A stretch of DNA of 64,000 nt, taken from positions 186,001-250,000 of IMG/VR virus record IMGVR_UViG_3300042907_001080. One strand, 5' to 3'. Numbering within the stretch: position 1 is the stretch's first letter; each line of letters begins with the position of its first letter. This document shows, piece after piece, positions 8,339-61,788 of this stretch. The translations under genes were made by a program, and so were the position numbers. The notes under the pieces were generated by a model. It saw only the letters and a program-made list of their open reading frames with translations, did no database searches and was not told the DNA's origin.

Positions 8339-8359
8339 AACACGCTCTCTTTAGTGTAT

Positions 8360-16129: not shown

Positions 16130-16154
16130 TTTTGTGTCCTATTCATATTTATCG

Positions 16155-30324: not shown

Positions 30325-30360
30325 TATTTAGCCCAAAGTTTTATAAGCCGGATGTAAATA
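30325..30360. promoter_or_regulatory. divergent pair of TAAATA late-type promoter motifs
   Basis: TAAATA on minus strand (30325-30330) before the structural operon and on plus strand (30355-30360) 4 nt before ATG 30365. Confidence 0.65.
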
Positions 30361-41616: not shown

Positions 41617-41625
41617 AATAAAGTA

Positions 41626-44003: not shown

Positions 44004-44112
44004 TGGTGTGGTCGGTAGGATTCGAACCTACAAAGCGATGTCTAAGACGTTGCCCTTGCCCAAATGCGTTTCACAACGGACCGGAGGTATACCAAGTTCC
44101 ACTCACGACCAC
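44004..44112 (-). tRNA. atypical tRNA-like RNA (109 nt), Leu-like body, no canonical anticodon arm
   Basis: Acceptor GTGGTCG/CGACCAC plus A-CCA, T arm GTAGG-TTCGAAT-CCTAC, D loop GGAACTTGGTA; 53-nt central region. Confidence 0.7.
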
Positions 44113-44147: not shown

Positions 44148-44175
44148 GACTTTTGTAGTTAAATACTGTCAGATT

Positions 44176-45156
44176 ATGACACAAGACTTCACAAAGATAC
44201 CATTCCATAACATAACAAGATTTGGTCAACGCACCATGTTGCATCGCCCGTTATTTTCTACCAGTTGGATTTTGGGCCGTTTCTGTAATTATAACTGTTC
44301 TTACTGTTGGCCCTATGCTAGATCGGACAAGGTAGATCACCAGCCTTTAGAAGTATATACTAATACTGTAGATGAAATCAAACGACAGGCTCGACTAAAT
44401 GGCTTCAATGAATTCCATTGGAGTTTCAGTGGCGGTGAACCTACTGCTTACCGACAGCTACATGATTTGATTAAACACCTTGACGAAACAGAAAGCACAT
44501 ACCAAAGTATACACATGACAACCAATTTAAGTCCTGGAAGTAAATGGTGGAATACCTGGTGTGCCAACACAGCATTACTACAACGCAGAAGTATCACAGC
44601 ATCATTTCATGATGAGTTTGCTCGAGAGCAGGAATTCGGTGACAAGTGTCTACAGTTATTGCATGAGCGTGTGCATGTCACAGTCAATCAAGTAATGGTC
44701 CCGGAAAAGTTTTATGAGCTTTATGAACGCATGTCTCGGCTACATGCTCGTGGAATCAATGTTACGCTCAAACCGCAAAGTGATCCTACAGCGAGTCGTG
44801 TAGTCGATGGCTACACAACAGAAATGATTGATCTATTACAGACTGGATTTCCTCAAACATCACAAGGCGAAGACGTTTATCAAATAGCATTGTATGATAC
44901 AGACAACAAAGAATATTTGTTCGATCAAGCAGAAAGATTTAATGCTTTTGGTTTTAACAAATTCCAAGGTTGGAGTTGCAATAGTGGGTATCAAAGTGTT
45001 ATAATAAGAGGTAATGAAGTGAAACGATCATATAGCTGTCACGACCGACTATTAGGAACACTAGAGAGCTTTGAGCTTTTTAAAAAACCAACAGTTTGTA
45101 TAACACCTAGTTGTGTCAGCAGTGCTGATTCAAAGATACCAAAATGTATAAACTAG
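44176..45156 (+). CDS. radical SAM protein with C-terminal Cys-rich (twitch-like) domain
   Basis: CNYNCSYC, SGGEPT, TTN, C..G..SC...C...C. Confidence 0.92.
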   Translation: MTQDFTKIPFHNITRFGQRTMLHRPLFSTSWILGRFCNYNCSYCWPYARSDKVDHQPLEVYTNTVDEIKRQARLNGFNEFHWSFSGGEPTAYRQLHDLIKHLDETESTYQSIHMTTNLSPGSKWWNTWCANTALLQRRSITASFHDEFAREQEFGDKCLQLLHERVHVTVNQVMVPEKFYELYERMSRLHARGINVTLKPQSDPTASRVVDGYTTEMIDLLQTGFPQTSQGEDVYQIALYDTDNKEYLFDQAERFNAFGFNKFQGWSCNSGYQSVIIRGNEVKRSYSCHDRLLGTLESFELFKKPTVCITPSCVSSADSKIPKCIN

Positions 45157-46121
45157 AAAACATAAAAGACATACATCTAGAATTAACAAGTAAGTGTCAA
45201 GCACGATGCCCAATGTGTCCTCGCCGAGTTAACGGAGGGATACTAAATCCTATTATGTCGTTAAATGAGATAACACTAGAACAATTTAAAGAATGGTTCT
45301 CAGATGAATTTATAAATCAACTGGATAGTCTGTTTATGTGCGGCAATTTAGGTGATCCTATTATTGCTGAAGATTGTTTAGAGATATTTCAATACTTAAA
45401 AGAAACTAATCCTAACATACGATTGAGCATGCATACAAATGGTAGTGCTAGAAATATACACTGGTGGAAAAAATTAGCAAAGTATAAAGTTAAAGTTACA
45501 TTTGGAATAGACGGTTTAGAAGATACACACAAGTTATATCGAATAAGCACTAATTGGAACACCATTATAAAAAATGCCGAGTCATTTATAAAAGCTGGCG
45601 GCGAAGCAGAATGGCACATGTTAGTGTTTAAGCATAACGAACATCAAATTGAAGAATGCCGTGCGCTAAGTCACAAACTTGAATTTAAAAAATTCACAAC
45701 CAAGCATACTAGTCGTTTTAAAGATAACAAATTTCATGTATTGGACGAAACCGGCAAGACTGTTAATATTCTTTATCCTACTAAACTTAGCACTTCACAT
45801 ACAGTAAATGTGTTGTCAGTATTACCAGCAGAGATACAATGCAAGGCAAAGAAATATAGTCAACTATACATAAGTGCAGACGGAGGAGTTAGTCCGTGTT
45901 GCTGGTTGGATTTTTCCTGGCAGTTGCCTAACCAGGACAATAGAATAAATTATATGGATAAAATTGGAGTTTATCCTAACCTAAATAAACAGTCGTTAAT
46001 AGATATATTTAATTCTGGTTTCTTTAGTAAGATTGAAAGTACCTGGTCAGCCGTTCCTTTAATGGAATGCGGCAAACAATGTGGACATTTTGATAAGCTA
46101 GGAGAGCAATTTGTTAGTTGA
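45144..46121 (+). CDS. radical SAM/SPASM-twitch protein
   Basis: CQARCPMC, CGNLGDP, HTNG, FGIDG, VSPCC. Confidence 0.92.
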   Translation: MYKLENIKDIHLELTSKCQARCPMCPRRVNGGILNPIMSLNEITLEQFKEWFSDEFINQLDSLFMCGNLGDPIIAEDCLEIFQYLKETNPNIRLSMHTNGSARNIHWWKKLAKYKVKVTFGIDGLEDTHKLYRISTNWNTIIKNAESFIKAGGEAEWHMLVFKHNEHQIEECRALSHKLEFKKFTTKHTSRFKDNKFHVLDETGKTVNILYPTKLSTSHTVNVLSVLPAEIQCKAKKYSQLYISADGGVSPCCWLDFSWQLPNQDNRINYMDKIGVYPNLNKQSLIDIFNSGFFSKIESTWSAVPLMECGKQCGHFDKLGEQFVS

Positions 46122-46704
46122 TACAGAACACTTACATCACTGGATGCAAGCCATAAGACAAAGCCCAGATCCTATGAGGACCATGGATGCATTCTGGTCT
46201 GGACAACTTAAAAGCAAAGAATGGTTGATCTCAAATTTAAGAAAACACATTAATAAATTTGTAGGTATTGATATACATGGTGGCTGGGTTGGTGTACTAG
46301 CCAGTATGTTGTTCCAAAGTGATATCCCTATTATTAATATTCGTAGTGTTGATATTGACCCTACCTGCGAATCTATTGCAGTTAACATGAACAAGATTGA
46401 AGAAATGGTTGGCAAGTTTCGTGCTGTCACAGCAGACATGTGTGCTCTTCGCAGTGATGCAGATGTCATTATCAACACCAGTTGTGAACACATAACACAA
46501 GACCAATATGACATATGGTTAAGCGGAATGCCACATAGCAGCCTACTAGCATTGCAAAGCAATAATTATAATATAGATGAACATGTTAGGATTGCTAACA
46601 GTTTAGAAGAGTTTAAAAAACAATGCCATCTGGACAATATTTTGTATGCCGGGGAACTTGATTTGCCGTTGTACAAACGATTTATGATTATAGGAAAACA
46701 ATGA
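46111..46704 (+). CDS. class I SAM-dependent methyltransferase-like protein
   Basis: IHGGWVGVL, SVDIDP, INTSCEH. Confidence 0.75.
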   Translation: MLVDTEHLHHWMQAIRQSPDPMRTMDAFWSGQLKSKEWLISNLRKHINKFVGIDIHGGWVGVLASMLFQSDIPIINIRSVDIDPTCESIAVNMNKIEEMVGKFRAVTADMCALRSDADVIINTSCEHITQDQYDIWLSGMPHSSLLALQSNNYNIDEHVRIANSLEEFKKQCHLDNILYAGELDLPLYKRFMIIGKQ

Positions 46705-47435
46705 TAGAATTAGGGTTAGTTAAATGGTATAATGACGCAAAGAGATACGGGTTTATTAAAGCAGACTCGGATGGAGAATCTATTTTGGCACAGAGTCATT
46801 CTATTGTGGAAGAACCAAAGACTTTGAGAGAATTTCAACGTGTAACTTTTGAAAGATATGTAACTGATAATGGCCTAGAAGCACGTACTATAAATATCGC
46901 CATGAACCCAGATTTATCGATTTACGAACACGAAGTTATATCATTGAAAAAACAACGACTTCATCTTTCTTCATTTGTAGGACATGTCTTATTAGTGGTT
47001 AATACTGCCAGCCGATGCGGACTTACACCTCAGTACGAAGGATTAGAAAAATTATTTCAAAAATATAAAGATAAAAAATTTACAATCCTGGCATTTCCGA
47101 CAAACAATTTCGCAGGACAGGAGCCTAATACAAATGCCGAAATTTTAGATTTTTGTGAGACAAATTATAATGTAAGTTTTTATGTTATGGAAAAATCAAA
47201 TATTGTAGAACAGGATAGTTCAAGCCCTGCACAATTCGCCGAAACTGCACCTAGAGAAATAAATTCTTTTTATAAAGACCTTGCCACCAGAACAAATGTT
47301 TTACCGCAGTGGAATTTCCACAAGTATCTAATTAATCGTACGGGTTCTATTATTAAAAGTTTTGATCATTTGACTCAACCAGACAATGATGTATTAATTA
47401 ACGCAATCGAAGAATTTTTGGATAGTAACGTATGA
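46701..47435 (+). CDS. cold-shock domain / glutathione peroxidase fusion
   Basis: N-terminal GLVKWYNDAKRYGFI (CSD RNP1); C-terminal VNTASRCGLTPQY, AFPTNNF.GQEP, WNFHKYLI. Confidence 0.85.
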   Translation: MIELGLVKWYNDAKRYGFIKADSDGESILAQSHSIVEEPKTLREFQRVTFERYVTDNGLEARTINIAMNPDLSIYEHEVISLKKQRLHLSSFVGHVLLVVNTASRCGLTPQYEGLEKLFQKYKDKKFTILAFPTNNFAGQEPNTNAEILDFCETNYNVSFYVMEKSNIVEQDSSSPAQFAETAPREINSFYKDLATRTNVLPQWNFHKYLINRTGSIIKSFDHLTQPDNDVLINAIEEFLDSNV

Positions 47436-48358
47436 AAATATTAATGACTGGATCATCGGGATTTATCGGATCTCACTTAGCACCACTTTTAGAAAAAGAC
47501 CACACAGTTCATCATCTCAAAAGCGATCTAACAGATCACAAGAGTGTTCAGCTAGAAGTAGCTTCTGTACAACCAGATATCATTGTGCACCTAGCTGCAC
47601 GTACAGAAGTAGAACAAAGCTTCTATGAACAAATTACCTTTAGTGAAATAAACTATATAGGAACAGTTAATTTAATTGAAGCAGCCGCCTCTGTTAAAAA
47701 TTTAAAGAACTTTGTGTTTGCTAGTACTATGGAAGTTTATGGTTGGCAACCTATTAGTGATACTGTAAAAAATGGCGCCATACCTAAAGTATTTGAAACA
47801 TTTGATGAGAACACTCAGCCTAACCCCAATGCTCCTTATTCTGTAGCCAAATATGGATGTGAGAAATATTTAGAATACGCTTACAGATGTTATGGATTGC
47901 CATTTACTGCTATACGTCAAACAAACAGCTATGGTCGTAAAGATAACAAGTTTTTTGTTACAGAACAAATTATTAGTCAGATGCTAGAAAATTCCAAAGA
48001 AGTAAATCTTGGATATGCTGAACCATATAGAAATTTTATTTTTATTGACGACCTATTAGATGCTTGGATTACAGTTATTACAAATCCTGATAAAGTAAAC
48101 AGTGGACTAATACTTACTATTGGTCCTGATGCTCCTATAAAGATTAGGGATTATGCACAAAAAATTGCCAAAAAATTAAACTGGCAAGGAACGATTAATT
48201 GGGATACTAAATTGTTCAGGCCTGGGGAGATTTACTGGCTTAATAGCAATCACAATCTAATAACTAAATTAACTGGATGGTATCCTAAAGTCAGTTTAGA
48301 CGAGGGGCTAGATCAAACTATTAAAATCTGGAAAGAAAAATATGATAGTAGAACATAA
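47432..48358 (+). CDS. NAD-dependent nucleotide-sugar epimerase/dehydratase
   Basis: TGSSGFIG, HLAA, STMEVYG, YSVAK. Confidence 0.92.
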   Translation: MKILMTGSSGFIGSHLAPLLEKDHTVHHLKSDLTDHKSVQLEVASVQPDIIVHLAARTEVEQSFYEQITFSEINYIGTVNLIEAAASVKNLKNFVFASTMEVYGWQPISDTVKNGAIPKVFETFDENTQPNPNAPYSVAKYGCEKYLEYAYRCYGLPFTAIRQTNSYGRKDNKFFVTEQIISQMLENSKEVNLGYAEPYRNFIFIDDLLDAWITVITNPDKVNSGLILTIGPDAPIKIRDYAQKIAKKLNWQGTINWDTKLFRPGEIYWLNSNHNLITKLTGWYPKVSLDEGLDQTIKIWKEKYDSRT

Positions 48359-48974
48359 GTTAAACGATGTACCGAGAATATCTGTTTTTGATAATGTACT
48401 ATCTGCTGAATTTTGTAGAGGTATGATAGAAAAACATTCCAATGCTGGAATGAATTCTAATTCTGGTTATCAAAGTCGTGTTGAGTCGTATGCCCAAGTT
48501 ACAGAAGAAGTTGAAAATAGAGGAATTAGTCTAGGTGTTGATCCCTATGATTATGATATAATAGCAACAGCTATTGTTAATGTTGCTAAAATTCCATATT
48601 CTCACATAGAGGCTATTGATATTTACAACTATCACGAAGGACAGTATCTAGCTTATCATCACGATTACTGTTATGACCCTAGACAAATCAACTATTATAA
48701 AAACGGTGGCGACAGAGTTGGAACCGGTATTTTTTATTTTAATGATGATTTTGTAGGCGGAGAAACTTATTTTCCTAAATTTGATGTATCTATTACTCCT
48801 AAGACTGGTTCCTTTTTGTATTTTGAACAATGCTATGACGAAGCAACTAATTGGGACACAATACACGAAAGCAAACTAATTACCAAAGGAACTAAGTGGA
48901 TCGCTAGTTGCTTTTTTAGTGATAGGCCTAGAGTAGGATGGTCTAGTAGAGATCATTTGTATGCTAACGGATAA
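48342..48974 (+). CDS. prolyl 4-hydroxylase-like 2OG-Fe(II) oxygenase
   Basis: Y..GQY...HHD, GGDR..T.IFY.ND...GGET.FP, HES..ITKGTKW. Confidence 0.88.
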   Translation: MIVEHKLNDVPRISVFDNVLSAEFCRGMIEKHSNAGMNSNSGYQSRVESYAQVTEEVENRGISLGVDPYDYDIIATAIVNVAKIPYSHIEAIDIYNYHEGQYLAYHHDYCYDPRQINYYKNGGDRVGTGIFYFNDDFVGGETYFPKFDVSITPKTGSFLYFEQCYDEATNWDTIHESKLITKGTKWIASCFFSDRPRVGWSSRDHLYANG

Positions 48975-49665
48975 TTGGATTCCTTTTTACAAATATAATG
49001 ATCAAGGTGTGCCTGGATGCATGTCTCAGCAAACCTATGAACCGTTAATAAATCCGGAAGGAACTGTATACTGTGCCAACTACGATCATAATAATCTGTA
49101 TCAACGTAAATGGCAACCAGACCGTGTGGGTTACACTCAAGACATTGTTGAATATTTTTTTAACAAAGAAGTTGGATATGCACACAAATTTAGCAACAAG
49201 CTATGGGCGCCGGAAATTATAGATATAGATTATGTTAGCAAACGTATTTTTTATAAATGGTATGGGCCCACTTGCAACGAATTAATATATACAGGCAGAA
49301 CTTTACCATCTGATTGGAAATTACAACTTCGAAATATCATGATGGATTGTTATAATGAAGGAGTTTACAAACTTACAATGTATCCACATTGTCATTACTA
49401 TGATAACAGCGGAATTATGCACACGCTAGATATGTATGGGTGCGTTGAAGTAGATGATCCGTTTATTGAAGCAAAGTATATGGATGGGATAATTCACGAA
49501 ACCGCTAAATTTAGACTAGACGAGACCGGACCTAAAAACAATAATAGATATGATTTAGAAAAAATGTTCTTCAATAGTTTATGCACCCACGTAAAATGGG
49601 GAGAATGCGATTTAAATTTTGTCTATCAAAATATAATTGGAGATAGCGATGAAATATATAGGTAA
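48961..49665 (+). CDS. protein-kinase-like fold protein with degenerate catalytic motifs
   Basis: F.KEV..., APEIIDID...KRIF, W..QL..I..D....GVYKLTMYP, TLDMYG; paralog of 60250-60945. Confidence 0.5.
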   Translation: MLTDNWIPFYKYNDQGVPGCMSQQTYEPLINPEGTVYCANYDHNNLYQRKWQPDRVGYTQDIVEYFFNKEVGYAHKFSNKLWAPEIIDIDYVSKRIFYKWYGPTCNELIYTGRTLPSDWKLQLRNIMMDCYNEGVYKLTMYPHCHYYDNSGIMHTLDMYGCVEVDDPFIEAKYMDGIIHETAKFRLDETGPKNNNRYDLEKMFFNSLCTHVKWGECDLNFVYQNIIGDSDEIYR

Positions 49666-50281
49666 CTGCGCAGATAAAATAGATTGGAATGAAGTAATTA
49701 AATTATGCCAAGAGAGCGTAACAGGAGATAGAAACACTGTGGTCTCTGTGGTTGAAAGATCCGAAGTTAATTTACAGAATCGAGAACCTATGCAGGCCAA
49801 GGTTTTATTGTCGGTAGCAGAACAAATAGCCAACGAACAATTGCTTCAAGAGTATAGAAAAGTGATAGGAGATTGGCGTGATGCTGGATGTGACCTGGAT
49901 AAAATTTATTGGTATGATTACTATCCAGGGGATCATTATCCAGAAAGTATATCAGATACATTTGCTGCCATACTAGGAATTCGCCCATTAAGAGTTTTTG
50001 TAAGTGAAGTATATCCGGGTATTACAGTTCCCTATCACTGGGATGTAGAAGATAAGGGACCAGAATGGTTAAAAAAATACGGAATGCTTTATAGATATAC
50101 CTGCTGTATAGATGTGCCGAGGGTCGGAAGTGTATTAATCGTTGACGATCATTGTTTATATGATTTTAAGCAAGGAGACATTTTTGAATGGGATAGTTAT
50201 AGAAACTATCATTCAGCTGCCAACGGCGGCGAACACATACAGTATTATTTTCACATGTTAGGATATAAAATAAAATGTTAG
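49649..50281 (+). CDS. aspartyl/asparaginyl beta-hydroxylase-like 2OG-Fe(II) oxygenase
   Basis: VYPG..VPYHWD, GDIFEW....YHSAANGG; start revised (GGAGA SD). Confidence 0.78.
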   Translation: MKYIGNCADKIDWNEVIKLCQESVTGDRNTVVSVVERSEVNLQNREPMQAKVLLSVAEQIANEQLLQEYRKVIGDWRDAGCDLDKIYWYDYYPGDHYPESISDTFAAILGIRPLRVFVSEVYPGITVPYHWDVEDKGPEWLKKYGMLYRYTCCIDVPRVGSVLIVDDHCLYDFKQGDIFEWDSYRNYHSAANGGEHIQYYFHMLGYKIKC

Positions 50282-50820
50282 AAAGAGTTGGTAACTGTTC
50301 AAAAATTATAGATTGGAACGAAGTTATAAAAGAGATTGCTGAACAACGACCGGCCTATATCGGACCTAGCCACAAGGAAGATGATCCAATTCCGGGCCTT
50401 AAAGAAGTAACAGATTTGTGGAAGCGTTCGGGATTCAAAACTGTTGCTGATGGTGGAACAGTGGAATGGGACATGTTTTTGCCTCATACAAATTTTAATA
50501 TTTCTATCGCTGAAAAATTTTGTGAGTTTGTTGGATTGAAAACGTATACAAGCTGCTGGATTAGTAGAATAAATCCTGCACGTTGCTCACCTTGGCATTG
50601 GGATGTCCATGACGATGAAGTAAATTTATCTCAAAGAACAGACATAGTTCGATATCATTGTCATATAGGACAACCGACACACGGTCATGTTTTAATAGTA
50701 GATAATTTTTGTTTATATAAACAGCCTCAGGGAGAAATATATAAATGGCCATCTAGAACAACTTGGCATTGCGGATTAAACAGTGGGCTAACTCCGAAGT
50801 ATCTTTTTAATATATGGTGA
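50275..50820 (+). CDS. aspartyl/asparaginyl beta-hydroxylase-like 2OG-Fe(II) oxygenase
   Basis: ISRINP...SPWHWD, GEIYKW....WHCGLNSG..PK. Confidence 0.78.
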   Translation: MLERVGNCSKIIDWNEVIKEIAEQRPAYIGPSHKEDDPIPGLKEVTDLWKRSGFKTVADGGTVEWDMFLPHTNFNISIAEKFCEFVGLKTYTSCWISRINPARCSPWHWDVHDDEVNLSQRTDIVRYHCHIGQPTHGHVLIVDNFCLYKQPQGEIYKWPSRTTWHCGLNSGLTPKYLFNIW

Positions 50821-50824
50821 TGAT

Positions 50825-51025
50825 ATGATCAATGAAAAATACAGTAATGAAGATGTTCCTATTCAAGATACATTTTATATGCAAAAGTTTATGGAGATTC
50901 AACGTCAAAATGTTGTATTATCAAATAAACTACGAGACTTATATGAAATTCTTGAGATCCGTGATGTTGTAGAAATGCATTTTGGGGATAAGTTTTTTAA
51001 TATCTTAAATGATACACCTGCATGA
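50825..51025 (+). CDS. hypothetical protein
   Basis: 66-aa ORF ATGA-coupled to a radical SAM gene. Confidence 0.6.
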   Translation: MINEKYSNEDVPIQDTFYMQKFMEIQRQNVVLSNKLRDLYEILEIRDVVEMHFGDKFFNILNDTPA

Positions 51026-54560: not shown

Positions 54561-55450
54561 TGTTTTATCTTTGTTAACGGAATGTCTGCTGCGCAGGTGC
54601 AGTAATTCCTATCGCATATAATAGGGTTTATAGGTATTGAAAATGTACCTGCATATATGTTACCAAGACTACCACCGACTCTACAAGTCGCTCGGTGCAC
54701 ATCGCCGTCCCAATTTATCATTAGGCTTTCTATGCCTGCGTTGCAAGTCCAGCCCTTGAATTTGTTTAGATGCAATTTTATTACGTCGTTGGCATGCATA
54801 ATTTCTACATCGTCTATTCTACAGTTAGCCTTTGCCGTGGCATTCTGTGAGAGAATCCATTCTAAGTCGTTACCATCATACCGCATATCGTCAAACACAT
54901 TATGATCGCCCTCAGTCCAGCGTATTCTACGCACAGCAAATCTAATCCCTTTTTCTCGGAACTCTTTGACTACTTTGCGAACACTGTCCATATGATCGTA
55001 GTGAGCCATTATGTTAACAAAAAAGTCTGTTTGAGTTTTGTCATAGAACTCGTTAATTGTTCTCATCACACGCTGCCAGTCATATTCAAAATGCAGACTA
55101 AACACTAGGTGATTAAAATACATTTCGTTTTGCAAATACCAGTTAGCAGATCGAGTTCCGTTGGTTGTTAAGTTGACCCAGAATATATCCTTGCGTTTAA
55201 AGTAGTCTAGTAGATCTTCTATATCGGGATGCACACAAGGTTCGCCACCTGTTAAACTAATACGTAACGGTTTTCCAATTTCGCATAGTTTATCAACAGT
55301 TGTTTCTAGGATGTTAATATCTGTATGCGAACTAAAATTATCATGTATGCTTGAAGGGCAATATGTACAGTCGTAGTTGCAACGTTTGCCTAAATTCCAT
55401 TCAACTTTTATTTGATCTTGATGCGGCCAAGAACTGGTTATTTTATACAT
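54557..55450 (-). CDS. radical SAM/twitch protein
   Basis: CNYDCTYC, TGGEP, TTNG, CNAG..ATC..LGNI..C...CTC. Confidence 0.92.
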   Translation of the reverse strand: MYKITSSWPHQDQIKVEWNLGKRCNYDCTYCPSSIHDNFSSHTDINILETTVDKLCEIGKPLRISLTGGEPCVHPDIEDLLDYFKRKDIFWVNLTTNGTRSANWYLQNEMYFNHLVFSLHFEYDWQRVMRTINEFYDKTQTDFFVNIMAHYDHMDSVRKVVKEFREKGIRFAVRRIRWTEGDHNVFDDMRYDGNDLEWILSQNATAKANCRIDDVEIMHANDVIKLHLNKFKGWTCNAGIESLMINWDGDVHRATCRVGGSLGNIYAGTFSIPINPIICDRNYCTCAADIPLTKIKQ

Positions 55451-56690
55451 ACTGTTTAAATTCTGGTATAACTGCTAACAAATCTTGATTGCGAGTAGAG
55501 TCTAATGCAAAATTAAAATCTAAAAAGTCTTGCCACAAATTATTTTGATCCTTTGCTTGTAGATAGTTAATGTTATCTTGTATTTGTTGATGCGTAACTG
55601 TGCCTAACAGCGGGTTCTTTTTAACTGCGCTCCATGTATCTACTTGTGACTTAACTGCTAGAAGTTTTGTAATTGCTAGTGCTTTTAATTCTTGTGGTAA
55701 CACTTGTGCTGACAGACAGTTGGGATAACTAACACGGTGGCTATAAAATATAATGTCCATGGTGTTAATAAAATAATCAATACATTCTGCGGCTTGTAGT
55801 ATGTTGCCAGCTTGTGCTGTAAATGCCCCAACTACACGACTCACGTTAGGAATTTTTTTTATTTCTTTAATGTTTGCTTCAACTTGATTAAAGTCGCTGT
55901 TACCGCGAATGTAATTGTAAACATCGTGAATGCCATCAAGGCTGACATTAACGGCAATGCTTCTAAAATATGGCCAGTAGTCATGTATAGTCCTTCCTTT
56001 GCTAATTCCTAGCGTTGTGCCATTTGTGGCGTATTTTAATTCAATGTTAGCACCATAAGGCTTTAACATGTCTAAAATTTTATAATGTTGAGGATCCATT
56101 AGAGGCTCTCCACCTGCAAACTCTACTCGTCTAAAATGAGGTAGAAGTTTTTCAAAACTGGTCCACCAGTTGTCGCTATCGTCAAACTCTCCGATATACT
56201 TTCCGGGATTATCTACAAGCTCTGTAATAGTGTGTACTAGGAAATTATTTTCTTTCTTATAGAACGGAGTTACTTTGTCCCAGTCTTTCCAGTTAGTGCT
56301 ATCTAACGGATTACACATGCGACACTTCAAGTTACACAAGTTGTTAAGTTTAATCTCCATTGTAGGAAATTCAAACGGCATAATTTCTTGTAGCGGTGTA
56401 TCGGGATATAAGTTAATACGTGCTTCTGGAATAACTCCGTTAATATGACGTTGGCGCAAACTTTCTACACCCTGGTCTTCTAAGTCAAAGCAAGGTTTAC
56501 AAACCTCAGGCCGTTCTCCGCATAAGACTTGTTTGCGAACAAGTTGCATGGTTTCATTATTCCATATTTCTTCTAGTGTATTATTTTGTATGAACCCAAC
56601 CGGCGCACTACGACAACAGACTTTGACGGCTCCGTCTTCGCGTGTTGCTAACCCTGTAAAAGGGTGCATACAAAATGTTTTACTTTGCAT
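55443..56690 (-). CDS. radical SAM protein with N-terminal twitch domain
   Basis: FCMHPF..VCC..CKPC; CNLKCRMC; FAGGEP; ATNG; start revised. Confidence 0.93.
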   Translation of the reverse strand: MQSKTFCMHPFTGLATREDGAVKVCCRSAPVGFIQNNTLEEIWNNETMQLVRKQVLCGERPEVCKPCFDLEDQGVESLRQRHINGVIPEARINLYPDTPLQEIMPFEFPTMEIKLNNLCNLKCRMCNPLDSTNWKDWDKVTPFYKKENNFLVHTITELVDNPGKYIGEFDDSDNWWTSFEKLLPHFRRVEFAGGEPLMDPQHYKILDMLKPYGANIELKYATNGTTLGISKGRTIHDYWPYFRSIAVNVSLDGIHDVYNYIRGNSDFNQVEANIKEIKKIPNVSRVVGAFTAQAGNILQAAECIDYFINTMDIIFYSHRVSYPNCLSAQVLPQELKALAITKLLAVKSQVDTWSAVKKNPLLGTVTHQQIQDNINYLQAKDQNNLWQDFLDFNFALDSTRNQDLLAVIPEFKQYV

Positions 56691-57288
56691 TGATAATATT
56701 GTAAAGTTTTTTGGCCGCAATGCTATGTGCTATTGGGCCGGGATGGTTATTGTCGGACGCTAAATCTTCTGTATTCAAAATGTTATCACGTAACGCATTA
56801 TTGATAAATTTGGGAATACTACCAAAGTATTCGCCAATGGTGACATCAATTACTCGATCTATCAACATCTCCGGTTTCGGTGGAGCCCAAAAAGGATAAT
56901 AACGGAGTCCTAAACTATTAATATATAATTCTGCATGATTAATATAGATACCTGACCTAACATTGTTGTCGTAATTAGAATGAACCTCAGACCATTTCTT
57001 AAACAATTCGTCGTCCTGCCACGGTCCTATTTTTTTGTTCTTTTCTACTATATTAAAAATTACATCTCTATGAGAATAGGTCCAACCCACTACAACCAAG
57101 TCATCTTTCTTAAACCTAAACGACAAGATACGGGATAGTATCTCTAGATTACTACTACCCGGATCTCCGTTATTAATAGTTGTTCTGCCAGTTAATTTTC
57201 CTAACACTGCCGGCCATGATTGACTAGACGGATCATCTAATGCTAATCCAAGGGTAAATGAACAACCGAATGTTATAAGTCTTGACAT
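56680..57288 (-). CDS. SGNH/GDSL-like hydrolase or acyltransferase
   Basis: FGCSFT, G.SN, D..HPG. Confidence 0.68.
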   Translation of the reverse strand: MSRLITFGCSFTLGLALDDPSSQSWPAVLGKLTGRTTINNGDPGSSNLEILSRILSFRFKKDDLVVVGWTYSHRDVIFNIVEKNKKIGPWQDDELFKKWSEVHSNYDNNVRSGIYINHAELYINSLGLRYYPFWAPPKPEMLIDRVIDVTIGEYFGSIPKFINNALRDNILNTEDLASDNNHPGPIAHSIAAKKLYNIINAK

Positions 57289-57986
57289 GATATTGCCCAT
57301 TGTCTTTCTTTACACCAAAAGCATTCGTTACAAACTGGAACGTATTGACCCGGTATATAGTTTTTATAATCAATGCCTACTATCTCGCCTTCACAACTGC
57401 GGGTAATTTCAAACAGATCCGTGAGGCCAAGCTCACTATACATTTTAACAATTTCTGACTTGTCTGTGAAGCGGAATGGATGATAAACCATAAAGCCCAT
57501 GTGTTCCATTTCTGCCAAATGCTTGTTGTCCTCTGTAGGGTCAATGTCACGTTCACTCATACCATTGAATTGTGCTAATCTTGGGTTACGGGTTACTCCG
57601 TTGTAAAACGCATCTATGTTATATTTCTTACAAATATACTCTGCGTAAGCTCTTGCTTGAATGTTGTCACCGCTCACTTGCTTACCATACTCGTCGGTTA
57701 AGTTTGGTCCTACATTGCCGTACTCTAAATCGGGCGCAATAAAGTTAATATGCCGTTTAAATGTTGTATGATAGAAATTTTGAAATAACCATTTACACAC
57801 AGTATCTGCATTGTCTTGTTGCCAAGGTTTGGTTTTCCAGCAACGTATATGATTAATGATATGTATAGTTATATTATGTTCTTTGGCTTTTTGGCAAACC
57901 ATATAGGCAAGTAATGCGCTATCGGCACCGCCACTAACGGCAATGGCAATGTTTTTCCATTTTGGATTGAAGGGTACCTTGAACAT
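57273..57986 (-). CDS. QueC-like PP-loop adenine nucleotide alpha-hydrolase
   Basis: VSGGADS, HPF...KSEIV, TRSC...CNECFWCKER; start revised to MFKVPF. Confidence 0.75.
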   Translation of the reverse strand: MFKVPFNPKWKNIAIAVSGGADSALLAYMVCQKAKEHNITIHIINHIRCWKTKPWQQDNADTVCKWLFQNFYHTTFKRHINFIAPDLEYGNVGPNLTDEYGKQVSGDNIQARAYAEYICKKYNIDAFYNGVTRNPRLAQFNGMSERDIDPTEDNKHLAEMEHMGFMVYHPFRFTDKSEIVKMYSELGLTDLFEITRSCEGEIVGIDYKNYIPGQYVPVCNECFWCKERQWAISCQDL

Positions 57987-57991
57987 GGATA

Positions 57992-58022
57992 TATTTACAC
58001 GAGTTATACTAGCACATAAATA
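57992..58022. promoter_or_regulatory. divergent TAAATA late-type promoter pair
   Basis: TAAATA 5 nt and 4 nt before the two divergent ATGs (57986 and 58027). Confidence 0.65.
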
Positions 58023-58026
58023 TTTC

Positions 58027-58695
58027 ATGATTAACATAACCATGTGGCAATGCCCAAAAGGACTAATAGAACAAGCATTATCAGAGTGCCCAATTGAAGG
58101 TAGTCGCACTGCCTTGAATACTCCAACCGGTGACTTCTTCTATGACAGTTGGCAAATCAAAGATGAGTTTAAAGGTACAGCGTGGGAAGAACTACTATCT
58201 ACTTTACCTTACACAATTGGAGAAGCTCGTGTTATTACACTTGATCCCAATCAAAGTTACATGTCCCACGCTGACATTGATAATCGTTGGCATTTAAACT
58301 TGTCGGGCGAGCAGTCATATTTGATAGATTTAGATAATCAAAAAATGTATAAACAACGTGTAGACAATCATTGGTGTTATATGTTTGCTAATAAAATACA
58401 TACTGCTAGTAATTACGGTAGTGTACCACGTAAACAACTTGTAGTTCGCGAACCGTTAAAACGTAGCCACCACAAAAATTTAATCAACGTTGAAATTACT
58501 CCAGCATACGAACAGTTTGACTATCGTTATCAGTTTGACAATATTATTAGCCCGTGGCTGAATCGTAAGAATCAAGAAGGCGTTCTTGACAACTTTGTTT
58601 ACAAAGATACGGTTGTATCCTTTAGTATAGCAGAAGATGTCCAAGGACAACTTGACGCAATTATTTCTAATAAGTTTAAAGTTATCTATGTTTAA
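58027..58695 (+). CDS. aspartyl/asparaginyl beta-hydroxylase-like 2OG-Fe(II) oxygenase
   Basis: GEARVI.L.P..SY..HAD..RWHL, IHTASNYG..PR..LV; start revised. Confidence 0.78.
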   Translation: MINITMWQCPKGLIEQALSECPIEGSRTALNTPTGDFFYDSWQIKDEFKGTAWEELLSTLPYTIGEARVITLDPNQSYMSHADIDNRWHLNLSGEQSYLIDLDNQKMYKQRVDNHWCYMFANKIHTASNYGSVPRKQLVVREPLKRSHHKNLINVEITPAYEQFDYRYQFDNIISPWLNRKNQEGVLDNFVYKDTVVSFSIAEDVQGQLDAIISNKFKVIYV

Positions 58696-59134
58696 AGTTG
58701 GAATTACTGGAACTACTCGCGGCCTCGGCCAAGCACTACATGACCACTTTGTCAATAAGGGCTATCATGTAACGGCCTTTAATAGAGGATCAGACATGAG
58801 TGCCGCGGTTGGATGTGATTTGTTTATCAACAATGCCTACGGCATACAAATGGATATACTTAACCAACTTTATGCGAGTGTTGGCAAGATGATTGTCATG
58901 GGCAGTATAGTTACAGATTTTCCCGATGTAGAAATGCCAGACTACACCGCACAAAAAACAAAATTAGAAGAACGTGTGTTAGAGCTTAACCTTCCTAACA
59001 TATTGTTATTAAAGCTATCTAGCACTGCTTACAACGATTCGCAAGTTGTAATTGACGCTATTGAGTATTGGCTAGCAAACCCGTTGGTTAATATTATATC
59101 TTTTAGAGCAATAGGCGGTCCAAATCGTGGATAA
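58688..59134 (+). CDS. short SDR-like oxidoreductase
   Basis: ITGTTRGLG, FINNA, YTAQK. Confidence 0.78.
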   Translation: MFKVGITGTTRGLGQALHDHFVNKGYHVTAFNRGSDMSAAVGCDLFINNAYGIQMDILNQLYASVGKMIVMGSIVTDFPDVEMPDYTAQKTKLEERVLELNLPNILLLKLSSTAYNDSQVVIDAIEYWLANPLVNIISFRAIGGPNRG

Positions 59135-59726
59135 AAAAATTATTGTAACCGGTCACACAAGCGGTGTTGGTAAAGCAATTTACGACAAGTTTAAAGAAAT
59201 AAGTTGTAGAGAAATTGTGGGAATGAGCCGTAGCAATGGATATGATATAGATAAAGACTTTGATAAGATTGTAGAAGAATCTACAGGCTGTGAACTGTTT
59301 ATTAATAATGCTTACAGAGACAGTCAGCAATTAAAATTAGTTGAAGCACTTAAAGACAAAGTAGACATGATGGTTGTTATGGGCAGTGTTAGTAGATTCT
59401 ATCCAGAACTTATTCCTACACAGTATGTACACGATAAACAAGCACTAGCGGAAGCCTGTAGACTTATTAGTTTAAATCCCAACGGTATTCCACTGCTACA
59501 TTTAGATTTAGGATTTATAGAAGGTACAACAGTAGAAGAAAACGACCCAACAGCCTTTGTTAGTGACTACACTACGTCCAAGGCCGACATTGTTGATACA
59601 ATTATCTTCTGGGCACAAAAGCCCTCTATTAGACAGATCGAGTTTAGATGGAAACTAACTCCGCAGGTCATGTCTGAATTAAAAAGAATTAATCCCGATT
59701 TAGATCCATCTAGGATAACGTTCTAG
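59127..59726 (+). CDS. SDR-like oxidoreductase
   Basis: VTGHTSGVG, FINNA, YVHDK. Confidence 0.8.
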   Translation: MDKKIIVTGHTSGVGKAIYDKFKEISCREIVGMSRSNGYDIDKDFDKIVEESTGCELFINNAYRDSQQLKLVEALKDKVDMMVVMGSVSRFYPELIPTQYVHDKQALAEACRLISLNPNGIPLLHLDLGFIEGTTVEENDPTAFVSDYTTSKADIVDTIIFWAQKPSIRQIEFRWKLTPQVMSELKRINPDLDPSRITF

Positions 59727-60257
59727 ATTCTCTAAAAATCTATCTCCGTATATTTTCCACACAGTTTGATCTGTGTACCTGTAATGAACTTCTTTAACAC
59801 GTTCCACTATGCCTATCTTTTCTAATGTGGGAAAATAATATCTGTGTACTAGCCTTTGACTCGCTACCTTGCTGTCATTAGATGTGGCATATATGTTTTC
59901 TTCTCCGACCCATGCTATACAGGCAGGTAATAAAAATTGGTCAGTTAGATTTTGATGTTCTGCAATTAGACGTTGGGGAGTTATTAATCCACCGTGTGGT
60001 CTTGCCGCACCAAACGTGCAGGTACGTGCTAACACCCTATAACTATCAGGCCCCATGACATCATCAAATGAGTGAGCTACTACACTACCGATGGCTTTAT
60101 TGTCCTGATACAGTATCCATGCTTTCCAGGATTTTTCATTGTGAAAACAATCTATCATGGATTTTTGACTGGAATTGTTTTCGAACCCTTTTTCTTTTGC
60201 TTCTTTATAAAACTCGGAAAGATCTAGATCAGAAGACCAATCTACAATATTATACAT
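59700..60257 (-). CDS. hypothetical protein, possible GNAT-like fold
   Basis: WILYQDNKAIGSVVAH..YRVLARTC..IYATSN..L.K.G; start revised. Confidence 0.5.
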   Translation of the reverse strand: MYNIVDWSSDLDLSEFYKEAKEKGFENNSSQKSMIDCFHNEKSWKAWILYQDNKAIGSVVAHSFDDVMGPDSYRVLARTCTFGAARPHGGLITPQRLIAEHQNLTDQFLLPACIAWVGEENIYATSNDSKVASQRLVHRYYFPTLEKIGIVERVKEVHYRYTDQTVWKIYGDRFLENLERYPRWI

Positions 60258-60945
60258 AAAGTTTTTTACACTCGTCCATAAAATCAGAAGGGAAGTTTGT
60301 TTTAAAACTTTCAAATGCTAACAGTTGTATGTCTTTAAAGGGAGTCGGCTTATCCACGTCTATTCCCATAGCAGACATTTTAGGAAATAGATCTGCTTGC
60401 CTATCTTCACTGATATGGCTCATTACGCTACGTAAACTAATAGCAGGATCGTGATCACGATAACAGAAAAAATAATTGATACTTTTAAGTTGACCGTTGA
60501 CAACAAAATAACTACTGGGATGTAGACTGTATTTGTAGATACCTAATGCTTTGTGTGCTTTAAATATTTCTAACATCTGTTCTCGCCAATTGGGCAGTAC
60601 ACTATCGTAGTCTTGTTTAATAGGATCAGATTGTTGCCAAAAGTCATCACCATCTATTTCAAGATAGAGTTTTCTTTTTTCTAAATCTATATTAATAATG
60701 TTGGGAACTAGGTGCGGAAATATATTACGCATTTGAGTAATAAAATTTACTTCGCGCAACCATTTTTCATTCATTAGACTAGGGTCTACTACTTGATTCT
60801 GACCTTTATGATAATCAGTATCGTTGTGGTACCATTGACAAAATGTTTTTTTATCTTTGCTAATTAAGCTGGTATAAATTAGGTTATTTCGGCAAAGGCC
60901 TTTTCCTGGAACATCGTTATAATAGTATTCATATTCTGCAGTCAT
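60250..60945 (-). CDS. protein-kinase-like fold protein with degenerate catalytic motifs
   Basis: WLREV.F...M...VPNIINID...RKLYLEI.G..., HKALGIYKYSLHPSS, LKSINYF; paralog of 48961-49665. Confidence 0.52.
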   Translation of the reverse strand: MTAEYEYYYNDVPGKGLCRNNLIYTSLISKDKKTFCQWYHNDTDYHKGQNQVVDPSLMNEKWLREVNFITQMRNIFPHLVPNIINIDLEKRKLYLEIDGDDFWQQSDPIKQDYDSVLPNWREQMLEIFKAHKALGIYKYSLHPSSYFVVNGQLKSINYFFCYRDHDPAISLRSVMSHISEDRQADLFPKMSAMGIDVDKPTPFKDIQLLAFESFKTNFPSDFMDECKKLYV

Positions 60946-60950
60946 ACAAA

Positions 60951-60967
60951 TACTTATCAGCTAAGTA
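60951..60967. promoter_or_regulatory. divergent TAAGTA late-type promoter variant pair
   Basis: TAAGTA 5 nt before each of the divergent ATGs (60945 and 60973). Confidence 0.55.
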
Positions 60968-60972
60968 TTAAC

Positions 60973-61788
60973 ATGATTAGAGGAATTGGCGGCAAGCCTT
61001 ACATTAATTTAGATCCATTTTTGGATGTAAAAGGGTTTACAGAGTTACATCCAGAAATCTGTAAAGGTTTTGCTTTAGCAAGGGATTATGCCAAAGAAGG
61101 CACATGGATGGCTCCAGGCTTTGATCAAAGTCGAGGCAGTTATCAGTGGAACTGGAAACCGATATACAAAGCACATGAAGAATATCTTGCCTTGTCGAAT
61201 GATCATCCCATTAAAATTCAAGGTCAAGAAATATATCCTACAGATTTTAAAGACTACAAACAACGCAATTTATTCACACGTTATCTTAAAAGTGTATTAG
61301 GTGCTAACGATCCTTATACCTATTATTTTCTATGGAACGAAGGCGACTGGAATGAACGCAATGCTGAAAGACAAAAGACTGAGGAAAGCAACTTCTTTCC
61401 CGGTGTTGTTCAGTGGGTAGAAAATCTACAAGAACAAGGTATAATAGATCGCATAGGGCGTGTTATATTTTTTCTTTGCGATCATAACGGCAAAGCATTT
61501 GAACATCGAGACCTAGATGCTAAAAACGGTGTGTTTGAAAATGATTACTATACTCCGCATAATAACGAATTCATACATATAAGATATCGCACCAAGCGAG
61601 GTTTCTATATATGGGATCCCGACACACAAGACAAACACTATATTAATAGCCATGCTGCTATGTGGAACGATCAAGACTGGCACGGTGGGGAATCTAGCCT
61701 AGAACAAGAATACGGACTTAGAATTGACTGTAAGTTTACACAAGAATTCCGTAAACAAATTGGAATAGATCATTTAGAGAATTATTAA
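60973..61788 (+). CDS. putative 2OG-Fe(II) oxygenase (Asp-hydroxylase-like)
   Basis: GRVIFF..EHRD (HxD) ... WND.DWHGG....GLRID. Confidence 0.62.
   Translation: MIRGIGGKPYINLDPFLDVKGFTELHPEICKGFALARDYAKEGTWMAPGFDQSRGSYQWNWKPIYKAHEEYLALSNDHPIKIQGQEIYPTDFKDYKQRNLFTRYLKSVLGANDPYTYYFLWNEGDWNERNAERQKTEESNFFPGVVQWVENLQEQGIIDRIGRVIFFLCDHNGKAFEHRDLDAKNGVFENDYYTPHNNEFIHIRYRTKRGFYIWDPDTQDKHYINSHAAMWNDQDWHGGESSLEQEYGLRIDCKFTQEFRKQIGIDHLENY

What the first reader, a model, noticed from the sequence alone, without database searches (positions are those of the whole stretch)
44160..60973. Every block of the enzyme cluster starts at a late-type promoter, pointing to a virion-assembly-stage role
Seen: the cluster has five alternating-orientation blocks. 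Each begins with TAAATA or TAAGTA just upstream of its first ATG (44160, 57992, 58017, 60951, 60962). The same motif precedes the tail and baseplate genes (30325, 16146, 8357, 5287). I did not find consensus sigma70 promoters like those of the early region at these block starts. Established: T4-type late promoters are TATAAATA read by a gp55-like sigma factor. Inference: the enzymes act late, which favours virion protein or glycan modification over pre-replicative nucleotide synthesis.
Basis: partly seen in the sequence, partly recalled or inferred. Interest (0 to 1): 0.72.

Follow-up and report, generated by a model that had tools for sequence, protein, structure and literature searches.

The report
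Late promoters heading a phage enzyme cluster
In this 282-kb lake-water jumbo phage, the short DNA word TAAATA that sits before the tail and baseplate genes also sits before each block of a large radical-SAM enzyme cluster. It is very probably the phage's T4-type late promoter, so the enzymes are probably made late; what they do is still unknown.

Summary
All five blocks begin with TAAATA (44160; 57997-57992 minus strand; 58017) or TAAGTA (60956-60951 minus strand; 60962), 4-10 nt before the first ATG.

- **Enrichment:** TAAATA is the most enriched hexamer upstream of genes in the whole genome (51 of 299 genes against 5.3 expected). It also beats dinucleotide shuffles (47 against 16±4).
- **Genes it precedes:** tail tube, baseplate, adaptor, tail fibre and holin genes.
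- **Sigma factor:** the genome encodes a gp55-like late sigma factor. No phage RNA polymerase was found.
- **Conservation:** the boxes are kept at the same junctions in diverged relatives.
- **Prior work:** the same ATAAATA plus gp55-like arrangement was already predicted for the jumbo phages CBB and GAP32, so this is a new member of a known kind.

New here is the spacing, which peaks at N4-5. With T4 geometry that puts +1 on the A of ATG, which implies leaderless late mRNAs. This holds for about 21-26 genes here and is lineage-wide in relatives.

Caveats:
- TAAGTA is not enriched genome-wide.
- One further block, beyond the window, has no box.
- Timing is not measured.

The cluster is really 32 kb with 12 radical-SAM genes. 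Late timing argues against pre-replicative nucleotide synthesis, but it does not single out virion or glycan modification.

The parts
44160..44165 (+). TAAATA box heading block 1, 10 nt before ATG 44176. Predicted late promoter giving a leader of about 4-5 nt.
   Evidence: Orthologous first genes in 18 of 30 distinct relatives carry TAAATA (17) or TAAGTA (1), mostly at N9-10 or N6.
44176..52422 (+). Block 1, 11 genes: 2 radical SAM (one with SPASM), methyltransferase-like, CSD-glutathione peroxidase fusion, NDP-sugar epimerase/dehydratase, 2OG-Fe(II) oxygenase, 4 unknowns and an N-terminal-twitch radical SAM (51022-52422).
57992..57997 (-). TAAATA box heading block 2, 5 nt before ATG 57986. 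Predicted leaderless late promoter.
   Evidence: 23 of 50 distinct relatives have TAAATA at N3-7; in nearly all the rest the gene follows a co-directional gene.
52370..57986 (-). Block 2, 6 genes: PP-loop ATPase (QueC/TilS-like), an unknown, and 4 radical SAM genes (55443-56720 is above the N-terminal-twitch family cut-off).
58017..58022 (+). TAAATA box heading block 3, 4 nt before ATG 58027. Together with 57992-57997 it forms a 40-bp back-to-back promoter pair.
   Evidence: 26 of 30 distinct relatives keep TAAATA at N3-7, mostly as ATAAATATTTC(T)-ATG, down to 28% protein identity.
58027..59726 (+). Block 3, 3 genes: Asp/Asn-hydroxylase-like cupin (nearest solved structure Cpz10), a weak short-chain dehydrogenase match below the Pfam cut-off, and an unknown.
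60951..60956 (-). TAAGTA variant box heading block 4, 5 nt before ATG 60945.
   Evidence: TAAGTA is kept in L060 and L064; TAAATA stands at N3-7 in 5 other relatives.
59700..60945 (-). Block 4, 2 genes: a protein with a RIO/APH/Kdo-kinase-like lead, and an unknown.
60962..60967 (+). TAAGTA variant box heading block 5, 5 nt before ATG 60973. The 27-bp spacer 60946-60972 holds both boxes as a near-palindrome.
   Evidence: The orthologous site is TAAATA in L060 and L064 (90% protein identity) and TAAGTA in L022.
60973..64000 (+). Block 5, which runs to G000 250571, 571 nt past the window end: Asp/Asn-hydroxylase-like protein, N-terminal-twitch radical SAM (61788-62942) and 2 unknowns.
30325..30330 (-). 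TAAATA box 32 nt before the 2485-aa tail gene. Comparison late promoter with a Shine-Dalgarno-bearing leader.
30355..30360 (+). TAAATA box 4 nt before ATG 30365 (95-aa ORF), divergent from the tail-gene promoter.
16146..16151 (-). TAAATA box 16 nt before the 68-aa gene that precedes the 1393-aa tail-fibre-like gene.
8357..8362 (-). TAAATA box 18 nt before gene 7763-8338.
5287..5292 (-). TAAATA box 33 nt before gene 4672-5253.
46889..46904 (+). Perfect T4 octamer TATAAATA, then N5, then an in-frame ATG inside the CSD-peroxidase gene, at the domain boundary. Possible internal late start that would give the peroxidase domain alone.

Best explanation
TAAATA, often ATAAATA, is this phage's late promoter. 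It is a lone -10-type box with no -35 element. It is read by host RNA polymerase core carrying the phage's gp55-like sigma factor, as in T4 and as predicted for the Rak2/CBB group of jumbo phages.

Each of the five blocks of the enzyme cluster in the window is headed by one such box. Three are consensus boxes and two are the single-mismatch variant TAAGTA. The blocks are therefore separate late transcription units, arranged as back-to-back promoter pairs inside 27-40-bp spacers.

T4 places its box at -13 to -6. On that geometry, a spacing of 5 nt (or 4) puts the transcription start on, or next to, the A of the ATG. Blocks 2-5 would then be made as leaderless mRNAs that need no Shine-Dalgarno site. 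Block 1 would have a leader of about 4-5 nt.

Shown: the motif, its enrichment, its spacing, its conservation, the sigma gene, and the link to structural genes. Inferred: late timing, the start point and leaderless translation.
For: **Motif**
- TAAATA is the top hexamer upstream of genes, 51 against 5.3 expected; 47 against 16 +/- 4 in dinucleotide shuffles.
- No information content at any of the 35 positions upstream of the box. A precedes the box in 25 of 46 sites.

**Genes behind it**
- Tail tube, baseplate wedge, head-tail adaptor and virion protein.
- Virion protein, holin, tail fibre, baseplate hub, tape-measure-like and hub/lysozyme.
- The giant tail genes in the window.

**Sigma factor**
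- gp55-family gene. Its nearest relatives are the late sigmas of 121Q, K64-1, fHe-Yen9-04 and Phosso.
- No RNA polymerase beta or beta-prime, T7-type polymerase or sigma70 region 2 in the contig.

**Literature**
- T4's box starts at -13 (PMC2988020).
- CBB and GAP32 have an ATAAATA consensus before structural genes and a gp55-like sigma (PMC5259590).

**Spacing**
- Bimodal: N4-6 (14 called genes; Shine-Dalgarno-like sequence in 1 of 14; ATG in 13 of 14) and N16-40 (Shine-Dalgarno-like in 23 of 31).
- TAAATA-N4/5-ATG occurs 29 times against 7 for the reversed control. 21 of the 29 are at, or 1-13 codons inside, called starts, and 5 more open uncalled ORFs of 64-112 aa.
- In 1.23 Mb of relatives, 139 such sites, of which 122 open an ORF of 60 aa or more. 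Other spacings give 9-23 sites each.

**Conservation at the five junctions**

**No sigma70 excess in the cluster**
Against: - No transcript data. No RNA run holds this phage, and lake metatranscriptomes gave only short pieces of relatives with no 5' end information.
- TAAGTA is not enriched genome-wide, so blocks 4 and 5 rest on position and on orthology alone.
- No gp33 homologue was found (a weak test). There is only a marginal sliding-clamp match (E 0.012), and the sigma does not align with T4 gp55's C-terminal clamp-binding segment. Coupling to replication, which is what makes T4 promoters 'late', may therefore not apply.
- Block 1 has an odd spacing (N10).
- One further block of the same cluster (G000 253549-250568, minus strand) has no box within 150 nt.
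- A few boxes also precede genes with sigma70-like promoters, so some genes may be expressed in more than one phase.
Confidence: 0.77

Rival explanations
1. TAAATA is a real phage promoter, but of a middle or continuously active class rather than strictly late. Alternatively, the cluster is also expressed early by other means, so timing says little about its role.
For: - No gp33 was found, the clamp match is marginal, and the sigma lacks a recognisable clamp-binding tail. The T4 mechanism that ties these promoters to replication is therefore unconfirmed.
- Some box-bearing genes also have sigma70-like promoters.
- One cluster block lacks a box.
Against: - The genes behind the box that could be named are overwhelmingly virion and lysis genes.
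- Block starts have no sigma70-like site better than background.
- The blocks are bounded by divergent or convergent neighbours, so read-through from early units is not available.
Confidence: 0.13
2. The word acts at the RNA level, as an A/U-rich translation enhancer or a processing site next to the start codon, and not as a promoter.
For: - In the N4-6 class it lies immediately before ATG, where a ribosome-binding signal would lie.
- Those genes lack Shine-Dalgarno sequences.
Against: - The same word occurs 16-40 nt upstream of genes that do have Shine-Dalgarno sites.
- In relatives it is present when the gene heads a block and absent when the same gene follows a co-directional gene.
- It comes as back-to-back pairs at divergent junctions.
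- It matches the box of the sigma family the phage encodes.
Confidence: 0.05
3. Chance matches in A+T-rich intergenic DNA.
For: - Intergenic DNA is A+T-rich.
- 14 other TAARTA copies lie inside cluster genes.
- TAAGTA alone is at its background level.
Against: - Enrichment over genome frequency, over same-composition words and over dinucleotide shuffles.
- A sharp spacing peak.
- Conservation in relatives down to 28% protein identity.
Confidence: 0.02

Closest known systems
Bacteriophage T4 late promoters (TATAAATA at -13 to -6, read by gp55 with gp33 and the gp45 clamp)
   Same: - A lone -10-type TATA-like box with no -35 element.
- The core TAAATA is identical.
- A gp55-family sigma is encoded.
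- The box precedes virion and lysis genes, on both strands.
   Different: - Only the hexamer is fixed. A precedes it in about 55% of sites, and the T of T4's -13 is not kept.
- The sigma is 280 aa, with an insertion of about 135 aa and no recognisable clamp-binding tail.
- No gp33 was found.
- About a third of the boxes that lie 4-40 nt before a called start abut the ATG (N4-6). I found no record of this arrangement for T4, where I did not test it.
Predicted ATAAATA late promoters of the Rak2-like jumbo phages CBB and GAP32 (PMC5259590)
   Same: - The same consensus, found upstream of structural genes.
- A gp55-like sigma whose relatives (121Q, K64-1, fHe-Yen9-04) are the best matches of this phage's sigma.
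- gp33 and gp45 were reported missing there too.
- Sigma70-like early promoters are also present.
   Different: - That work is also only in silico.
- No spacing peak or leaderless class was reported there.
- In 121Q, TAAATA-N2-10-ATG shows no N4 sites and only 6 of 39 at N5.
- Those phages have no comparable radical-SAM cluster: tblastn found weak matches only in RsoM2USA and Vibrio phages K566 and K567.
Leaderless mRNAs of bacteria and phages (for example lambda cI from PRM; 70S ribosomes bind a 5'-terminal AUG). From my own knowledge and reference 27 of PMC5312081.
   Same: - The start codon sits at the predicted +1.
- There is no Shine-Dalgarno site.
- ATG is used almost exclusively.
   Different: - Here it would be a whole temporal class, about 8% of genes, set by a fixed box-to-ATG distance and conserved across a phage lineage.
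- The 5' ends have not been mapped.
Small-molecule and peptide tailoring pathways with several radical-SAM and 2OG oxygenases (TokK/ThnK carbapenem methylases, CysS, Cpz10 of caprazamycin, SPASM/twitch peptide maturases)
   Same: - The B12-radical SAM just outside the window matches TokK at E 7e-77 and CysS at E 5e-37.
- The block-3 hydroxylase matches Cpz10 at E 1e-6.
- Three genes exceed the cut-off of the N-terminal-twitch radical SAM family NF033640.
   Different: - No precursor peptide, carrier protein, NRPS/PKS or known pathway core was recognised.
- The cluster is in a lytic jumbo phage, under late promoters.
- The substrate is unknown.

Membership tests
T4-type (gp55-dependent) late promoter | TATAAATA-like box at the -10 position with no conserved -35 element | tested here: met
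   Selecting sites by the hexamer TAAATA, A precedes it in 25 of 46. All 35 upstream positions carry 0.14 bit or less. T4's first T is not conserved.
T4-type (gp55-dependent) late promoter | A gp55-family sigma factor encoded by the phage | tested here: met
   G000 104078-104920(-): phrog_12791 E 1.7e-80, phrog_234 E 3.2e-24, T4 gp55 E 1e-6. Segments 1 and 2 align.
T4-type (gp55-dependent) late promoter | The box precedes virion-structure and lysis genes | tested here: met
   Tail tube, baseplate wedge and hub, adaptor, virion proteins, tail fibre and holin.
T4-type (gp55-dependent) late promoter | A+T-rich segment just downstream of the box | tested here: inconclusive
   66% A+T in the 5 nt downstream, against 67% upstream and 60% genome-wide. 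There is a weak preference at +1 and +2.
T4-type (gp55-dependent) late promoter | gp33 co-activator | tested here: not met
   No match to T4 gp33 even at E 10. This is a weak test: the protein is small and fast-evolving, and the contig is estimated 80% complete.
T4-type (gp55-dependent) late promoter | Activation by the DNA-loaded sliding clamp through a C-terminal epitope on the sigma | tested here: inconclusive
   Only a marginal clamp-family match (phrog_223, E 0.012). There is no alignment to the C-terminal segment of T4 gp55.
T4-type (gp55-dependent) late promoter | Transcription starts about 6 nt after the box, late in infection and dependent on the sigma | not testable with these tools
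   No RNA run holds the phage. Laid metatranscriptome contigs are relatives' fragments without end information.
Rak2/CBB-type jumbo-phage late promoter (ATAAATA) | ATAAATA consensus before structural genes, plus a gp55-like sigma of that clade | tested here: met
   Consensus as above. The best matches of the sigma are 121Q, K64-1, fHe-Yen9-04, vB_Ec-M-J and Phosso at 40-46% identity. Described in PMC5259590.
Leaderless mRNA | No Shine-Dalgarno site, and an ATG start codon | tested here: met
   Shine-Dalgarno-like sequence in 1 of 14 N4-6 genes against 23 of 31 N16-40 genes. ATG in 13 of 14.
Leaderless mRNA | The 5' end of the transcript is the A of AUG | not testable with these tools
   Inferred only, from T4 geometry (-13 to -6) and the N5 peak.
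Host sigma70 (early) promoter | TTGACA-N16-18-TATAAT at the block starts | tested here: not met
   82 weak sites against 77 +/- 9 in shuffles, none at a block start in the right orientation. The one good site in the 44-kb gap (44147-44119, minus strand) points away from the cluster.
phiKZ/AR9-type promoters of phage multisubunit RNA polymerases | Phage-encoded beta and beta-prime homologues | tested here: not met
   No match to PF00562 or PF00623 in the contig, while the controls rang in 14 of 14 genomes. The contig is about 80% complete.

The most novel reading that the evidence does not exclude
In this abundant lake jumbo-phage lineage, a whole temporal class of genes is expressed as leaderless mRNAs. 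The class includes tail tube, baseplate wedge and adaptor genes and four of the five enzyme blocks. The gp55-type box is held exactly 4-5 nt from the ATG, so promoter and start codon form one 14-15-nt module, often doubled back-to-back in 27-40-bp spacers. This module drives a 32-kb tailoring pathway with 12 radical-SAM genes and an unknown product. That pathway is always paired with a conserved anticodon-less tRNA-like RNA, which might serve it as an aminoacyl or substrate carrier.
Probability: 0.4. Interest if true: 0.7.

Novelty: new member of a known kind. Interest (0 to 1): 0.5.

Why it matters
**Annotation.** The result gives a practical rule for an abundant but uncultured group of freshwater jumbo phages. 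TAAATA marks late units, and TAAATA-N4/5-ATG marks true start codons. Standard gene callers overshoot or miss these starts: eight of my longest-ORF starts and several small ORFs in this genome are affected.

**The enzyme cluster.** It places one of the largest radical-SAM gene clusters seen in a phage in the same predicted expression class as the virion genes. That narrows its possible roles. A role in pre-replicative nucleotide supply is unlikely. Modification of late products, of finished DNA or RNA, or synthesis of a compound made at the end of infection, remain possible.

**Leaderless class.** If the leaderless reading is right, it is a compact way of coupling transcription and translation signals. 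It may let late genes escape dependence on Shine-Dalgarno pairing.

Tried and rejected
- **DNA similarity.** Megablast of the cluster against 50,697 phage records found no match.
- **Protein similarity in phages.** tblastn of the twitch radical SAM found only weak hits in RsoM2USA, Vibrio K566 and K567 and one marine fragment.
- **RNA evidence.** No RNA run holds the phage. Laying four freshwater RNA libraries at 80% likeness gave short relatives' contigs with no usable ends or timing. DNA runs show only that it recurs in lake-water metagenomes.
- **TAAGTA as a general second consensus: rejected.** It occurs 6 times against 6.7 expected.
- **Sigma70 promoters at block starts: none**.
- **Phage-encoded polymerases or extra sigma: none**. 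The T7-type search had no positive control.
- **DNA-hypermodification hallmarks.** No thymidylate-synthase-like hydroxymethylase and no TGT/DpdA in the contig. This lowers but does not exclude nucleic-acid modification.
- **Selenocysteine idea: rejected.** I considered it for the peroxidase next to the tRNA-like RNA, but the active site reads Cys and there is no in-frame TGA.
- **tRNA-like RNA.** Neither ARAGORN nor Rfam calls it.
- **Solved structures.** No PDB sequence match for the twitch radical SAM or the block-5 first gene.
- **Spacing peak in other phages.** A pattern scan of 121Q, Phosso, T4 and Yoloswag showed no excess over the reversed control and no N4 class. I could not tie matches to annotated starts there.
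- **Literature.** Searches found no report of leaderless late mRNAs from gp55-type promoters, nor of this cluster.

Full report
**Setting.** The window is bases 186,001-250,000 of a 281,658-bp viral contig with 40% G+C, estimated 80% complete. The contig recurs in many lake-water metagenomes. No cultured phage is similar at DNA level. Protein matches point to jumbo myoviruses. I made rough gene calls for the whole contig from ORF length and codon usage: 300 genes covering 94% of the sequence. I corrected two calls by eye at the block 2/3 junction.

- The region has five blocks of alternating orientation.
The spacings are N10 at 44160, N5 at 57997-57992 (minus strand), N4 at 58017, N5 at 60956-60951 (minus strand) and N5 at 60962.
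- The four comparison sites before tail and baseplate-region genes are also exact, at N32, N16, N18 and N33.
- Block 3 starts at ATG 58027, not at the longer ORF's ATG 57943. Block 2 starts at 57986.

**The motif is well above background.**
- TAAATA is the most enriched hexamer in the 60 nt upstream of all genes: 51 of 299 against 5.3 expected. It ranks ahead of the Shine-Dalgarno words and TATAAT.
- It exceeds all 14 other arrangements of the same letters.
- It exceeds dinucleotide-preserving shuffles of the same upstream segments: 47 against 16.1 +/- 3.9, maximum 26 of 300.
- A third of all copies touch the 6% of the genome that is intergenic.
- There is no information at any of the 35 positions upstream of the box. 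A is favoured just before it (25 of 46), and there is a weak preference at the two positions after it.
- This is therefore a lone -10-type box, (A)TAAATA.
- TAAGTA alone is not enriched (6 against 6.7).

**What reads it.**
- The contig encodes a gp55-family sigma at 104078-104920, minus strand. It matches the PHROG 'sigma factor for late transcription' at E 1.7e-80, the T4 gp55 family at E 3.2e-24 and T4 gp55 itself at E 1e-6. Conserved segments 1 and 2 align around an insertion of about 135 residues.
- Its best relatives are the late sigmas of 121Q, K64-1, fHe-Yen9-04, vB_Ec-M-J and Phosso. In 121Q the gene likewise sits back-to-back with virion genes.
- No beta or beta-prime homologue, T7-type polymerase or sigma70 region 2 was found. 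Clear TTGACA-N17-TATAAT promoters exist elsewhere. The phage therefore evidently uses the host polymerase.
- For phage CBB, and GAP32, an ATAAATA consensus before structural genes, a gp55-like sigma and missing gp33 and gp45 were already described in silico (PMC5259590). I also found no gp33 and only a marginal clamp match.

**Which genes carry the box.** Every box-bearing gene that could be named is a late function:
- Tail tube, baseplate wedge, head-tail adaptor and virion protein.
- Virion protein, holin, tail fibre, baseplate hub, a weak tape-measure-like match and hub/lysozyme.
- The giant tail proteins of the window.
- The one metabolic gene among those named is a heptose kinase/adenylyltransferase-like gene.

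**Two spacing classes.**
- The distance from box to start codon is bimodal.
- One class lies at 16-40 nt and usually has a Shine-Dalgarno site (23 of 31).
- The other lies at 4-6 nt, with no room for one (1 of 14), and uses ATG in 13 of 14 cases.
- Independent of gene calls, TAAATA-N-ATG peaks sharply at N5 (18) and N4 (11), against 3 and 4 for the reversed pattern. All other spacings are at or below the control.
- Of these 29 sites, 13 are called starts. Eight lie 1-13 codons inside my longest-ORF calls and are probably the true starts. Five open uncalled ORFs of 64-112 aa, plus one of 39 aa. One is an in-frame internal start.
- In 1.23 Mb from 75 related contigs there are 62 N4 sites and 77 N5 sites, and 122 of the 139 open an ORF of 60 aa or more. 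Other spacings give 9-23 sites, mostly without ORFs.
- The T4 review numbers the first T of TATAAATA as -13 (PMC2988020). The box therefore ends at -6, and five intervening bases put +1 on the A of ATG.
- I infer that these genes are transcribed as leaderless mRNAs. This is inference; no 5' ends are available.

**Conservation at the five junctions.** Eighty related loci were fetched with the PP-loop protein.
- Block 3: 26 of 30 distinct relatives keep TAAATA at N3-7, mostly as ATAAATATTTC(T)-ATG, down to 28% protein identity.
- Block 2: 23 of 50 keep it. In nearly all the rest the gene follows a co-directional gene and has no box, which is what a promoter predicts and a translation signal does not.
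- Block 1: 18 of 30 have a box, mostly at N9-10 or N6. The 4-nt insertion that makes N10 here is visible against L022.
- Blocks 4 and 5: the closest relatives (L060 and L064, 88-90% identity) have TAAGTA before the block-4 gene and TAAATA before the block-5 gene. L022 has TAAGTA before the block-5 gene. The G variant thus interchanges with the consensus at an orthologous, exactly spaced site. That supports function, although the word is not enriched overall.

**What could not be shown.** Timing is unmeasured. No RNA library holds this phage, and four freshwater RNA libraries yielded only short pieces of relatives. T4-style coupling to replication is unconfirmed because gp33, and a clamp-binding tail on the sigma, were not found.

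**The cluster is larger than the finding.**
- It runs from 44176 to G000 262,544, about 32 kb and 40 genes in seven blocks. It ends at a strong bidirectional terminator.
- It holds 12 radical-SAM genes. Three are above the cut-off of the N-terminal-twitch family NF033640. One B12-dependent member matches TokK at E 7e-77 and CysS.
- It holds at least five 2OG/Asp-Asn-hydroxylase-like proteins. The block-3 one is nearest to Cpz10 of caprazamycin biosynthesis.
- It also holds a kinase-fold lead, an NDP-sugar epimerase/dehydratase, a PP-loop ATPase, a methyltransferase-like protein and a CSD-peroxidase fusion.
- The sixth block (253574, plus strand) has TAAATA-N5-ATG. The block divergent from it (253549, minus strand) has no box within 150 nt.
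- The radical SAM at 51022 is 83-89% identical across more than 120 sequence clusters, and more than 4,200 proteins match it. It is therefore a core gene of a very abundant lineage.

**Reading for function.**
The contig also lacks a thymidylate-synthase-like hydroxymethylase and a TGT/DpdA.
- The enzymes do not single out virion-protein or glycan modification. Twitch/SPASM radical-SAM enzymes and Asp/Asn hydroxylases suit peptide or protein tailoring. The epimerase suits sugar chemistry. TokK, CysS and Cpz10 are small-molecule tailoring enzymes.
- I rank the options as follows: protein or peptide tailoring first; then nucleic-acid modification (including of the neighbouring RNA), glycan building and a small molecule as roughly equal seconds. 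None is tested.

**Verdict.** The promoter interpretation is well supported and places the phage with known gp55-type systems. The functional inference is only partly supported. The most interesting by-products are the apparent leaderless late class, the size and conservation of the cluster, and the tRNA-like RNA beside it.

Noticed in passing
window 44004-44112, minus strand; promoter-like site 44147-44119, minus strand: A conserved tRNA-like RNA gene lies back-to-back with cluster gene 1.
- It has a 7-bp acceptor stem with many compensatory changes among more than 15 relatives, A73, an encoded CCA, a near-invariant T-arm and a long variable-arm hairpin.
- The anticodon arm is replaced by a GNRA- or UUCG-capped hairpin. 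Some relatives have a 7-nt loop containing CAU.
- A TTGACC-N17-TATACT site puts +1 on G1.
- ARAGORN and Rfam do not call it.

It could be an aminoacyl or substrate carrier for the pathway; this is untested.
   Followed up: partly
window 46889-46904, plus strand, inside gene 46701-47435: A perfect T4 octamer TATAAATA, then N5, then an in-frame ATG lies at the boundary between the cold-shock domain and the glutathione-peroxidase domain. The peroxidase might therefore also be made alone from an internal late start. The active site has Cys, not Sec.
   Followed up: partly
G000 250001-262544 (beyond the window end); L015:568-12544: The enzyme cluster continues for 12.5 kb. It adds four more radical-SAM genes (one B12-dependent and TokK-like, E 7e-77) and two Asp/Asn-hydroxylase-like genes. 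One block (253549-250568, minus strand) has no TAARTA box. The cluster ends at a strong bidirectional terminator near 262545-262565.
   Followed up: partly
window 31858 and 34791 (minus-strand starts); 30365 (plus strand): TAAATA-N5-ATG lies 10 and 5 codons inside the longest-ORF starts of genes 31301-31888 and 33946-34806, so their real starts are probably 31858 and 34791. TAAATA-N4-ATG opens an uncalled 95-aa ORF at 30365-30652, divergent from the 2485-aa tail gene.
   Followed up: partly
window 52370-52422 and 59700-59726: Convergent blocks overlap by 53 and 27 nt at their 3' ends, with no terminator-like hairpin between them. Late transcripts from opposite strands would therefore overlap as antisense.
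   Followed up: no
window 41617-41660, upstream of gene 40780-41616 (minus strand): A consensus sigma70 promoter (TTGACA-N17-TATAAT) sits among minus-strand genes next to late structural units. Early-type and late-type units are therefore interleaved.
   Followed up: no
window 51022-52422: This N-terminal-twitch radical SAM is unusually conserved: 83-89% identity over more than 120 clusters and more than 4,200 hits. The neighbouring PP-loop protein drops to 52-80% identity in the same relatives. No solved structure matches it by sequence.
   Followed up: partly
G000 266000-270800 (outside the window): tRNA-like 3' ends (TTCGATTC...) appear just upstream of genes at 266007 and 266773, and a gap of about 2 kb follows. 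This is probably the phage's tRNA gene region. I did not examine it.
   Followed up: no
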